NCBI RefSeq assembly: GCF_001194135.2 | Contig: NC_069007.1 | Location: 10,181,869 to 10,224,392, forward strand | Length of the DNA stretch: 42,524 nt | Source of the DNA: Octopus bimaculoides | Taxonomy: Eukaryota | Reading direction: 5' to 3' | Part shown: positions 24,260 through 24,351 of the stretch, piece by piece | How the letters are laid out: each line of letters begins with the position of its first letter | Numbering within the stretch: position 1 is the stretch's first letter | Program-made: the position numbers and the translations under genes | Notes under the pieces: model-generated | Seen by the model: only the letters and a program-made list of their open reading frames with translations | Told to the model about the DNA's origin: nothing | Databases searched by the model: none

Positions 24260-24351
24260 CGCCCACAGGGGGACATGAACCCACGACCCTCAGCTGACTC
24301 TGAAGATTCAGTCATAAAAGTCTGATGCTCTACCGACTGAGCTATGCGGGC
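24260..24351 (-). tRNA. tRNA-Lys(TTT) gene with a 19-nt intron at 37/38 (24296-24314); three non-consensus positions
   Basis: Spliced length 73 nt: acceptor GCCCGCA/TGTGGGC, D stem GCTC/GAGC, anticodon loop CTTTTA|A, discriminator G, TTTT a few nt downstream. Deviations: A31-G39 mismatch, T50-C64 mismatch, A58->T. Confidence 0.85.

What the first reader, a model, noticed from the sequence alone, without database searches (positions are those of the whole stretch)
24260..24351. Intron-containing tRNA-Lys(UUU), with an intact anticodon-intron pair
Seen: a 19-nt insert TGACTGAATCTTCAGAGTC sits exactly between positions 37 and 38. Its third-last base G can pair with C32, and AGAG can pair with C32-U35, as expected for a TSEN substrate. 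The intron is also self-complementary (GACT/AGTC, CTGAA/TTCAG). Known: well-studied animal tRNA introns are mainly in Tyr-GTA, Ile-TAT, Leu-CAA and Arg-TCT, while a Lys-TTT intron is familiar from budding yeast; excised metazoan introns can circularise (tricRNA). Inference: a lineage-specific intron-bearing Lys family. This copy has three lesions (G39, C64, T58) and may be a decaying paralogue.
Basis: partly seen in the sequence, partly recalled or inferred. Interest (0 to 1): 0.7.

Follow-up and report, generated by a model that had tools for sequence, protein, structure and literature searches.

The report
Intron-bearing octopus tRNA-Lys(UUU) gene copy
This is a real lysine tRNA gene copy in the Octopus bimaculoides genome that carries a standard 19-base tRNA intron, of a kind that turns out to be common in marine invertebrate DNA, and this copy has two damaging mutations, so it is probably a weak or dead copy.

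Summary
Window 24351..24260 is a 92-nt tRNA-Lys(UUU) with a 19-nt insert exactly between positions 37 and 38 (Rfam tRNA 48.4 bits, E 1.8e-7). The window is Octopus bimaculoides, GCA_001194135.2, chromosome CM046627.1.

The insert looks like a canonical TSEN-type intron. C32 can pair with intron G(-3), there is a 4-bp anticodon-intron helix, and 6 nt run from C32 to the exon end.

All 104 have G at -3. One contig's protein is closest to annelid and mollusc proteins. So the intron is not peculiar to one lineage.

The octopus intron shares the family's CTGA...TCAG hairpin motif (17 of 64 animal-type introns; about 0.15% expected by chance).

C64 (a U50.C64 mismatch) is shared with 10 environmental loci and is not a lesion.

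The copy scores 4-14 bits below its homologues, so it is probably a decaying or weak paralogue. Whether other octopus Lys-UUU genes carry the intron could not be tested.

The parts
24260..24351 (-). Whole pre-tRNA-Lys(UUU) gene, 92 nt
   Evidence: Rfam RF00005 48.4 bits, full model. ARAGORN reports the same span.
24315..24351 (-). 5' exon, tRNA positions 1-37. Anticodon UUU is at 24316-24318 and C32 is at 24320.
   Evidence: Read. It differs from the environmental animal-type homologues only at positions 6 and 7.
24296..24314 (-). 19-nt intron TGACTGAATCTTCAGAGTC. G(-3) at 24298 pairs with C32. A CTGA/TCAG hairpin lies inside it.
   Evidence: The insert falls at 37/38 in the Rfam alignment. 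G(-3) is found in 104/104 unique homologous introns. CTGA..TCAG motif. Intron hairpin energy -2.6 kcal/mol.
24260..24295 (-). 3' exon, tRNA positions 38-73. G39 = 24294, U50 = 24283, T58 = 24275, C64 = 24269.
   Evidence: Read. Column comparison with 20 unique animal-type spliced sequences.
24238..24250 (-). Two T4 runs 10 and 19 nt after the tRNA 3' end (AAGCATTTGTTTTGATAATTTTC). These are Pol III terminator-like.
   Evidence: Read. Homologues have T-runs at the same distance.
24196..24237 (+). 42-nt 5' module of an octopus SINE-like repeat, antisense to the tRNA and directly after its trailer. It is context, not part of the gene.
   Evidence: BLAST matches to copies at 881, 2359, 13853(-), 28790, 36516 and 37517(-).
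24354..24405 (.). (CG)n(CA)n microsatellite 3 nt upstream of the tRNA 5' end, then a 10-N assembly gap (24396-24405).
   Evidence: repeat family D9.

Best explanation
Window 24351..24260 (minus strand) is a nuclear tRNA-Lys(UUU) gene copy of Octopus bimaculoides, at about CM046627.1:10,206,128-10,206,219. It is interrupted at the canonical 37/38 position by a 19-nt protein-spliced (TSEN-type) intron.

Inferred mechanism, as for other animal pre-tRNAs:
- Pol III transcribes from internal A and B boxes and stops at the T-runs 10-19 nt downstream.
- TSEN measures from the mature domain.
- It cuts after A37, and cuts after intron C(-1) in the bulge beside the C32:G(-3) pair.
- RtcB joins the exons and may circularise the intron.

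The intron is inherited, not a private insertion. It belongs to an intron-bearing Lys-UUU family that is common in marine invertebrate-type DNA, including at least one lophotrochozoan-type host.

This copy has two private changes. U39G removes the 31-39 pair that closes the 3-nt bulge at the 3' splice site. A58U breaks the T54-A58 T-loop pair and the B-box consensus. It is therefore most likely a weakly expressed, poorly spliced or dead paralogue.

Shown here: the gene, the intron position, the pairing potential, the family-wide rules, the species and the private lesions. Inferred: transcription, splicing, circularisation and loss of function.
For: 1. Full-length tRNA model match with the insert in the anticodon loop. 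It is the only tRNA-like hit in the window at E <= 1.

2. Source: a window exon is 99% identical to O. bimaculoides LOC106874773, and locus L123 from GCA_001194135.2 aligns at 100% to window 1-18829.

3. At least 120 metagenome contigs hold the same Lys-UUU body with an 8-38 nt stretch after A37, that is, an insert of 6-36 nt. Most inserts are 18-20 nt.

4. Across 104 unique introns, -3 is G in 104/104 and -4 is A in 81/104. Only 24% of shuffled introns can pair with C32. The octopus intron has G(-3), A(-4) and a 4-bp helix.

5. CTGA...TCAG occurs in 17/64 animal-type introns (0.15% expected) and in 0/41 others. The octopus intron has it; 0.13% of its own shuffles do. Intron hairpin energy is -2.6 kcal/mol, against a family mean of -2.65.

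6. Drosophila rules are met: a C-G proximal pair, and 6 nt from that C to the exon end (PMC6614914).

7. Host clues:
- The L025 GT92 protein is closest to named Capitella (41%) and Haliotis (35%) proteins.
- A CDI domain and LRRNT+LRR domains occur on other contigs.
- A U3 snoRNA lies on L028.

8. No animal-type locus holds an intronless Lys-UUU copy. Arrays of 2-14 copies all carry the intron.

9. Lesions:
- Positions 39 and 58 are invariant in 20/20 unique spliced homologues, and the octopus copy differs at both.
- The changes at 6/67, 7/66 and 5/68 all keep base pairing (C-G, A-T, G.T).
- The variants at 57 and 64 also occur within the family.

10. Rfam scores: 48.4 bits here, 52.3-62 for the homologues, and 52.3-56.7 for those that share U50.C64.

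11. T-runs lie 10 and 19 nt downstream, as in the homologues.
Against: - No second Lys-UUU gene from any cephalopod was obtained. About 72 kb of further octopus-type DNA (loci brought in by relatives of the window's reverse transcriptase) held no tRNA, so a family-wide intron in octopus is inferred, not shown.
- Global alignment of the octopus intron to the 104 environmental introns is no better than chance (247 of 1000 shuffles do as well). Common descent of the intron rests on position, length, the -3/-4 rule and the CTGA..TCAG motif.
- The unique introns are not phylogenetically independent, so the motif enrichment is overstated.
- Taxonomy of most contigs is unknown. The AT-rich subset with discriminator T is partly giant-virus DNA.
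- Thermodynamic folding does not favour the splicing-competent fold. With G39, the minimum-energy fold pairs C32 with G39 (-5.8 against -3.3 kcal/mol). Homologues show the same weakness.
- There are no RNA data.
- The score deficit is small, so the copy may still work.
Confidence: 0.72

Rival explanations
1. It is a fully functional Lys-UUU gene. The A31.G39 mismatch and U58 are tolerated, and the copy contributes to the octopus tRNA pool.
For: - The score is still well above the Rfam gathering threshold (48.4 against 29).
- The acceptor stem is 7/7 paired, with compensated changes.
- The terminator, the A box and the anticodon-intron pair are intact.
- The deficit against U50.C64 homologues is only 4-8 bits.
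Against: T39 and A58 are invariant in all 20 unique animal-type spliced sequences, and T39 in all 132 matches. A58 is also the invariant A of the B-box consensus GGTTCRANNCC, and it pairs with T54 (textbook knowledge). G39 removes the pair that closes the 3-nt bulge, which is invariant in Drosophila pre-tRNAs, and it allows a competing C32-G39 pair.
Confidence: 0.2
2. It is a private, chance insertion into an already dead tRNA-Lys pseudogene, and not a real intron.
For: The copy carries lesions and lies in repeat-rich DNA between microsatellites and SINE fragments. No other octopus copy was seen.
Against: The insert falls exactly at 37/38. Its length is the family mode. It has the invariant G(-3) and the common A(-4). 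It also has the family's CTGA..TCAG hairpin, expected in 0.13% of shuffles. At least 120 contigs from other organisms have an insert at the same place.
Confidence: 0.05
3. It is the tRNA-related head of a tRNA-Lys-derived SINE, or a retroposed copy, and not a tRNA gene. Such SINEs were described in squid and octopus in the 1990s; I recall this from memory and did not check it here.
For: The window is full of SINE-like repeats. A 42-nt SINE 5' module lies directly after the tRNA trailer, and a simple repeat follows.
Against: - The cloverleaf is complete, with a paired acceptor stem and discriminator G.
- Two T4 terminators come immediately after the 3' end.
- There is no second copy in the window or in about 72 kb of other octopus-type DNA.
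- None of the window's SINE copies scores as tRNA even at E <= 1.
- The adjacent SINE module is on the opposite strand.
- A retroposed mature tRNA would lack the intron.
Confidence: 0.03
4. ARAGORN's reading is right: an unusual tRNA with a 6-nt anticodon loop, a 2-base 'anticodon' and a long variable arm built from the insert.
For: ARAGORN output.
Against: That fold uses the insert as the anticodon-stem 3' strand and as the variable arm. In homologues the insert varies in length (6-36 nt) and sequence while the exons stay constant, which fits an intron and not structural arms. Rfam aligns the sequence as a class I tRNA with a loop insert.
Confidence: 0.01

Closest known systems
Saccharomyces cerevisiae tRNA-Lys(UUU) genes, one of the ten intron-containing yeast tRNA families (PMC6582322)
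   Same: Same isoacceptor, intron at 37/38, protein-spliced (Sen/TSEN type).
   Different: This is a fungal tRNA body (from memory, it would not match the CAGACTTTTA...CTGAGGG pattern used here). The intron sequence is unrelated. Yeast uses the Trl1 heal-and-seal ligation pathway rather than RtcB.
Well-studied animal intron-bearing tRNA families: Tyr-GUA, Ile-UAU, Leu-CAA, Arg-UCU (PMC12168002; Drosophila rules in PMC6614914)
   Same: Position 37/38, short intron, C-G proximal (anticodon-intron) pair, 6 nt from that C to the exon end, and the expected TSEN + RtcB pathway with possible intron circles.
   Different: A different isoacceptor. Lys-UUU is not listed among the intron-rich animal tRNAs in that survey. 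Here the 31-39 pair that should close the 3-nt bulge is broken.
Environmental intron-bearing Lys-UUU genes found here (L001-L122; at least 120 contigs, animal-type subset 64 unique introns)
   Same: - The anticodon arm and flanking bases were fixed by the search pattern.
- Outside those fixed bases, the rest of the exons is also close: 7 differences from the nearest homologue.
- Intron position, typical length, invariant G(-3), frequent A(-4), CTGA..TCAG hairpin.
- U50.C64 mismatch shared with 10 loci.
- T-run terminators.
   Different: The octopus copy has C6-G67 (the others have G6.U67), and it has G39 and U58 where all others have U39 and A58. Its intron ends ...CAGAGTC, two bases longer than the common ...CAGAT. 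Overall intron sequence similarity is not significant.
tRNA-Lys-derived SINEs of cephalopods (recalled from 1990s literature, not checked here)
   Same: tRNA-Lys-like sequence in a cephalopod genome, in SINE-rich surroundings.
   Different: Here there is a complete cloverleaf, immediate terminators, an intron, and no repeated copies detected.

Membership tests
Nuclear class I tRNA gene (Rfam RF00005) | Full-length match to the tRNA covariance model above the gathering score | tested here: met
   48.4 bits against 29, model positions 1-71, E 1.8e-7.
Nuclear class I tRNA gene (Rfam RF00005) | Four paired stems of the cloverleaf | tested here: met
   Acceptor 7/7 (one G.U), D 4/4, anticodon 4/5 (A31.G39), T 4/5 (U50.C64). 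Read. The U50.C64 mismatch also occurs in 10 homologous loci.
Nuclear class I tRNA gene (Rfam RF00005) | Invariant T-loop A58 / B-box GGTTCRANNCC | tested here: not met
   The sequence is GGTTCATGTCC, with T at position 58. All 20 unique animal-type homologues have A.
Nuclear class I tRNA gene (Rfam RF00005) | Pol III terminator (T4 or longer) shortly after the 3' end | tested here: met
   TTTT at +10 and +19 (24247-24250 and 24238-24241), read.
Canonical eukaryotic (TSEN-type) tRNA intron | Insert exactly between positions 37 and 38 | tested here: met
   Rfam alignment and exon-by-exon match to the homologues.
Canonical eukaryotic (TSEN-type) tRNA intron | Anticodon-intron (proximal) pair: position 32 with intron -3 | tested here: met
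   C32:G(-3) here. G(-3) is found in 104/104 unique homologous introns. It is C-G in all 16 Drosophila intronic tRNAs.
Canonical eukaryotic (TSEN-type) tRNA intron | 3-nt bulge at the intron/3'-exon junction, closed by the 31-39 pair | tested here: inconclusive
   The bulge U(-2) C(-1) A38 is possible, but A31.G39 cannot close it. RNAfold prefers C32-G39.
Canonical eukaryotic (TSEN-type) tRNA intron | Six nucleotides from the 5' base of the proximal pair to the end of exon 1 | tested here: met
   C32-U33-U34-U35-U36-A37, read.
Canonical eukaryotic (TSEN-type) tRNA intron | Removal from the transcript (a spliced tRNA, and a free or circular intron) | not testable with these tools
   No RNA data were available.
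tRNA-derived SINE | Many dispersed copies of a tRNA-like head joined to a common body and tail, with no terminator after the head | tested here: not met
   There is no other copy in the window or in about 72 kb of other octopus-type DNA. T4 runs follow the tRNA directly.
tRNA pseudogene / decaying paralogue | Private changes at family-invariant, structure-forming positions, and a lower model score than homologues | tested here: met
   U39G and A58U. 48.4 bits against 52.3-62. Loss of function itself was not tested.

The most novel reading that the evidence does not exclude
Lys-UUU may be a further, old, selectively kept intron-bearing tRNA family of spiralian animals (annelids and molluscs, perhaps wider), in which every Lys-UUU gene carries the intron. 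Its intron hairpin repeats the two strands of the anticodon stem in swapped order (CUGA...UCAG). That could point to an origin by duplication of the anticodon arm, or to a role in folding, intron-dependent modification or a stable intron circle.
Probability: 0.3. Interest if true: 0.55.

Novelty: new member of a known kind. Interest (0 to 1): 0.33.

Why it matters
tRNA introns in animals are usually described as limited to Tyr, Ile-UAU, Leu-CAA and Arg-UCU, and their purpose is still debated. A Lys-UUU intron family that is widespread outside the model animals gives one more natural test case for why some tRNAs keep introns. It has an invariant C32:G(-3) pair and a recurrent hairpin motif. tRNA-Lys(UUU) also has a heavily modified anticodon loop, which makes it a useful test case. 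The octopus copy on its own adds little, because it is probably a damaged paralogue.

Tried and rejected
- Shared repeats: BLAST of the whole window against the 120 metagenome loci matched only the tRNA, so none of the loci is demonstrably cephalopod.
- Intron homology by global alignment: not significant, so it is not used as evidence.
- Sampling more octopus DNA through relatives of the window's reverse transcriptase and through LOC106874773: four loci (L123 overlaps the window), about 72 kb of DNA beyond the window, no tRNA.
- Exact-protein look-ups of the ORF that runs through the tRNA and of the neighbouring ORF: neither is on record.
- phmmer of the translated tRNA against 1.84 billion representative proteins: one hit, another environmental intron-bearing Lys-UUU and not an octopus paralogue.
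- Literature searches for Lys-UUU introns in molluscs or other invertebrates, and for the metagenome accessions: nothing relevant.
- Unconstrained RNAfold of the pre-tRNA does not give a cloverleaf. This is usual for a single tRNA sequence, so it was not used.
- ARAGORN's long-variable-arm fold was rejected (see rivals).
- A reading with two separate insertions (TGACTGA and TCAGAGTCAGCT around an original ATCT) was considered. It was rejected as less parsimonious than one intron plus a U39G change.

Full report
**What is there.**
- The tRNA lies on the minus strand, window 24351 to 24260, and is 92 nt long.
- Rfam's tRNA model matches it end to end at 48.4 bits (gathering score 29, E 1.8e-7) and places the extra bases in the anticodon loop.
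- It is the only tRNA-like match in the window even at E <= 1. The other sub-threshold hits are simple-repeat matches to microRNA models.
- Direct reading gives a 5' exon of positions 1-37 ending CUUUUA, a 19-nt insert TGACTGAATCTTCAGAGTC, and a 3' exon starting AGCUGAGGG.
- The acceptor stem is fully paired and the D stem is intact.
- The anticodon stem has an A31.G39 mismatch, the T stem has a U50.C64 mismatch, and the T loop reads TTCATGT (T at 58).
- Two T4 runs lie 10 and 19 nt after the 3' end.
- ARAGORN finds the same 92 nt but forces a fold with a 6-nt anticodon loop and a long variable arm. I reject that fold for the reasons given under Rivals.

**Where it comes from.**
- An exon-like ORF at window 5062-5523 is 99% identical to Octopus bimaculoides LOC106874773.
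- The locus fetched for that protein, from GCA_001194135.2 chromosome CM046627.1, aligns at 100% to window 1-18829, gaps included.
- The tRNA therefore sits at about 10,206,128-10,206,219 of that chromosome.
- The window is repeat-rich and has 5,662 N.
- Three nt upstream of the tRNA lies a (CG)n(CA)n microsatellite, then a 10-N gap.
- After the tRNA trailer lies the first 42 nt of an octopus SINE-like repeat, on the opposite strand, and then (TA)n.

**Is the insert an intron?**
- I scanned metagenome contigs for AGAGCATCAGACTTTTA, then 8-38 nt, then CTGAGGGTC.
One bacterial MAG contig added 14 tandem copies.
- In all 132 matches the two bases before CTGAGGG are A38 and T39, so the inserts are 6-36 nt, most often 18-20 nt.
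- Across 104 unique introns, the third-last base is G in 104 of 104 and the fourth-last is A in 81 of 104.
- Only 24% of shuffled introns could pair with C32 at that place.
- This is the anticodon-intron, or proximal, base pair. It is C-G in all 16 Drosophila intronic tRNAs and is needed for splicing there. Those pre-tRNAs also keep 6 nt from that C to the exon end and a 3-nt bulge at the 3' cut site (PMC6614914).
- The octopus insert has G(-3) and A(-4), can form a 4-bp helix with C32-U35, and keeps the 6-nt spacing.

**A shared intron motif.**
- The 'animal-type' subset has acceptor GCCCGG and discriminator G, and comprises 64 unique introns.
- In it, CTGA...TCAG occurs 17 times (0.15% expected from shuffles) and CTG...CAG occurs 31 times (1.8% expected). 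Among the 41 other introns the counts are 0 and 1.
- The octopus intron has CTGA...TCAG, which 0.13% of its own shuffles have.
- These letters form the intron's hairpin: -2.6 kcal/mol in octopus against a family mean of -2.65 (shuffles -1.13).
- They are also the two strands of the anticodon stem in swapped order.
- Global alignment of the octopus intron to the others is no better than chance. The case for a shared origin therefore rests on position, length, the -3/-4 rule and this motif.
- The unique introns are related to each other, so the enrichment figures are upper bounds.

**Who carries these genes?**
- The 522-codon ORF on L025 is a GT92 glycosyltransferase. Its best named relatives are Capitella teleta (41%) and Haliotis species (35%).
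- L027, L051, L089 and L115 encode a protein with a CDK-inhibitor (CDI) domain, and L038 encodes an LRRNT+LRR protein.
- L028 carries a U3 snoRNA.
- The AT-rich matches with discriminator T include giant-virus contigs.
- From memory, several sample codes (Ga01263xx, Ga00561xx) are gutless-worm host metagenomes. I could not check this.
- No animal-type locus holds an intronless Lys-UUU gene, and loci with 2-14 copies carry the intron in every copy.
- The intron is therefore widespread, not peculiar to one lineage.
- A 2025 survey of GtRNAdb names Tyr, Ile-UAU, Leu-CAA, Arg-UCU and Met as the intron-rich animal, fungal and plant tRNAs and groups all others together (PMC12168002). Yeast Lys-UUU is a known intron family (PMC6582322).
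- I found no paper describing Lys-UUU introns in invertebrates. The held library is not complete.

**State of this copy.**
- I compared the octopus exons with 20 unique animal-type spliced sequences. They differ from the majority at nine positions.
- Positions 6/67, 7/66 and 68 keep pairing (C-G, A-U and G.U), which is what a gene family under selection would show.
- The variants at 57 and 64 also occur in the family. GTGGG/CCCCC, the U50.C64 mismatch, is found in 10 loci from at least three sample sets, so C64 is not a lesion.
- Positions 39 and 58 are invariant in all homologues, and both are changed here.
- U39G removes the pair that closes the 3' splice-site bulge. It also allows C32 to pair with G39 instead of intron G(-3) (-5.8 against -3.3 kcal/mol).
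- A58U breaks the T54-A58 pair and the B-box consensus (textbook knowledge).
- Rfam scores agree with modest damage: 48.4 bits here, 52.3-56.7 for homologues with U50.C64, and up to 62 for the others.

**Rivals.**
- A functional gene remains possible (0.2), because the deficit is small.
- A private chance insertion (0.05) is unlikely given the position, the length, the -3/-4 rule and the hairpin motif.
- A SINE head (0.03) does not fit. The cloverleaf is complete, terminators follow at once, there are no other copies, none of the window's SINEs scores as tRNA, and the intron is present.
- ARAGORN's fold (0.01) does not fit homologues whose insert varies freely in length and sequence while the exons stay fixed.

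**What could not be done.**
- No tool here searches a cephalopod genome by DNA.
- About 72 kb of further octopus-type DNA, reached through proteins, held no tRNA.
- Exact-protein look-ups of ORFs at the locus failed.
- A protein-space search with the translated tRNA found only one more environmental example.
- Whether the other Lys-UUU genes of octopus carry this intron is therefore the open question. A whole-genome tRNA scan would settle it.

**Verdict.** This is a real, canonical-position intron in a tRNA-Lys(UUU) gene copy of Octopus bimaculoides. It is a new member of a known kind of feature. The copy itself is probably decaying. The wider pattern, an intron-bearing Lys-UUU family across marine invertebrate-type DNA, is the more interesting part.

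Noticed in passing
L010 (OFDO01002803.1), tRNA at 1286-1380 (-): The exons differ from the vertebrate/insect tRNA-Lys3 sequence (as I recall it) at one base. The gene carries a 22-nt insert at 37/38 (61.6 bits). It sits beside an ORF with bacterial MraW/RsmH and HisI domains on a 1.6-kb, 32% GC contig. This is either a chimeric assembly or a bacterium-like genome carrying a eukaryote-type intron tRNA.
   Followed up: partly
L127-L131 (IMG/VR, including GVMAG-M-3300023184-40 and GVMAG-M-3300027754-9); also L017, L023, L050, L078: Giant-virus contigs carry Lys-UUU genes with 10-24 nt inserts at 37/38. These also have G at intron -3.
   Followed up: partly
L121/L122 (CBDBEG010000035.1, labelled 'Rubritalea sp.' MAG): A 14.4-kb contig is made of 14 tandem 1054-bp units, each holding an intron-bearing animal-type Lys-UUU gene. 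This looks like eukaryotic contamination of a bacterial MAG.
   Followed up: partly
window 10153-10213: (TAACCC)x6 abuts (TAGGGT)x4 head to head, right after a 425-N gap: an interstitial telomere-like palindrome.
   Followed up: no
window 881, 2359, 13853(-), 24196, 28790, 36516, 37517(-): A roughly 42-nt module (GTTTCAGYCA..GCTGTGGYCATGCTGGAGCACC) heads SINE-like repeats whose bodies differ between copies. One copy lies directly after the tRNA trailer, on the opposite strand.
   Followed up: partly
window 42412-42524 and 7060-7175: Perfect tandem repeats: 24 bp x 4.7, running off the window end, and 43 bp x 2.7.
   Followed up: no
window 5062-5523 (+); 15495-17635 (+); 5843-6085 and 39727-40580: An exon of O. 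bimaculoides LOC106874773 (99% identity); broken LINE reverse-transcriptase ORFs; mariner-like transposase fragments.
   Followed up: partly
animal-type loci, for example L028, L032, L035, L038, L102, L111: In 11 of 64 unique introns, the 3' splice site lies at the centre of a perfect 14-nt palindrome, CTCAGAT|ATCTGAG. The octopus copy lacks it.
   Followed up: partly
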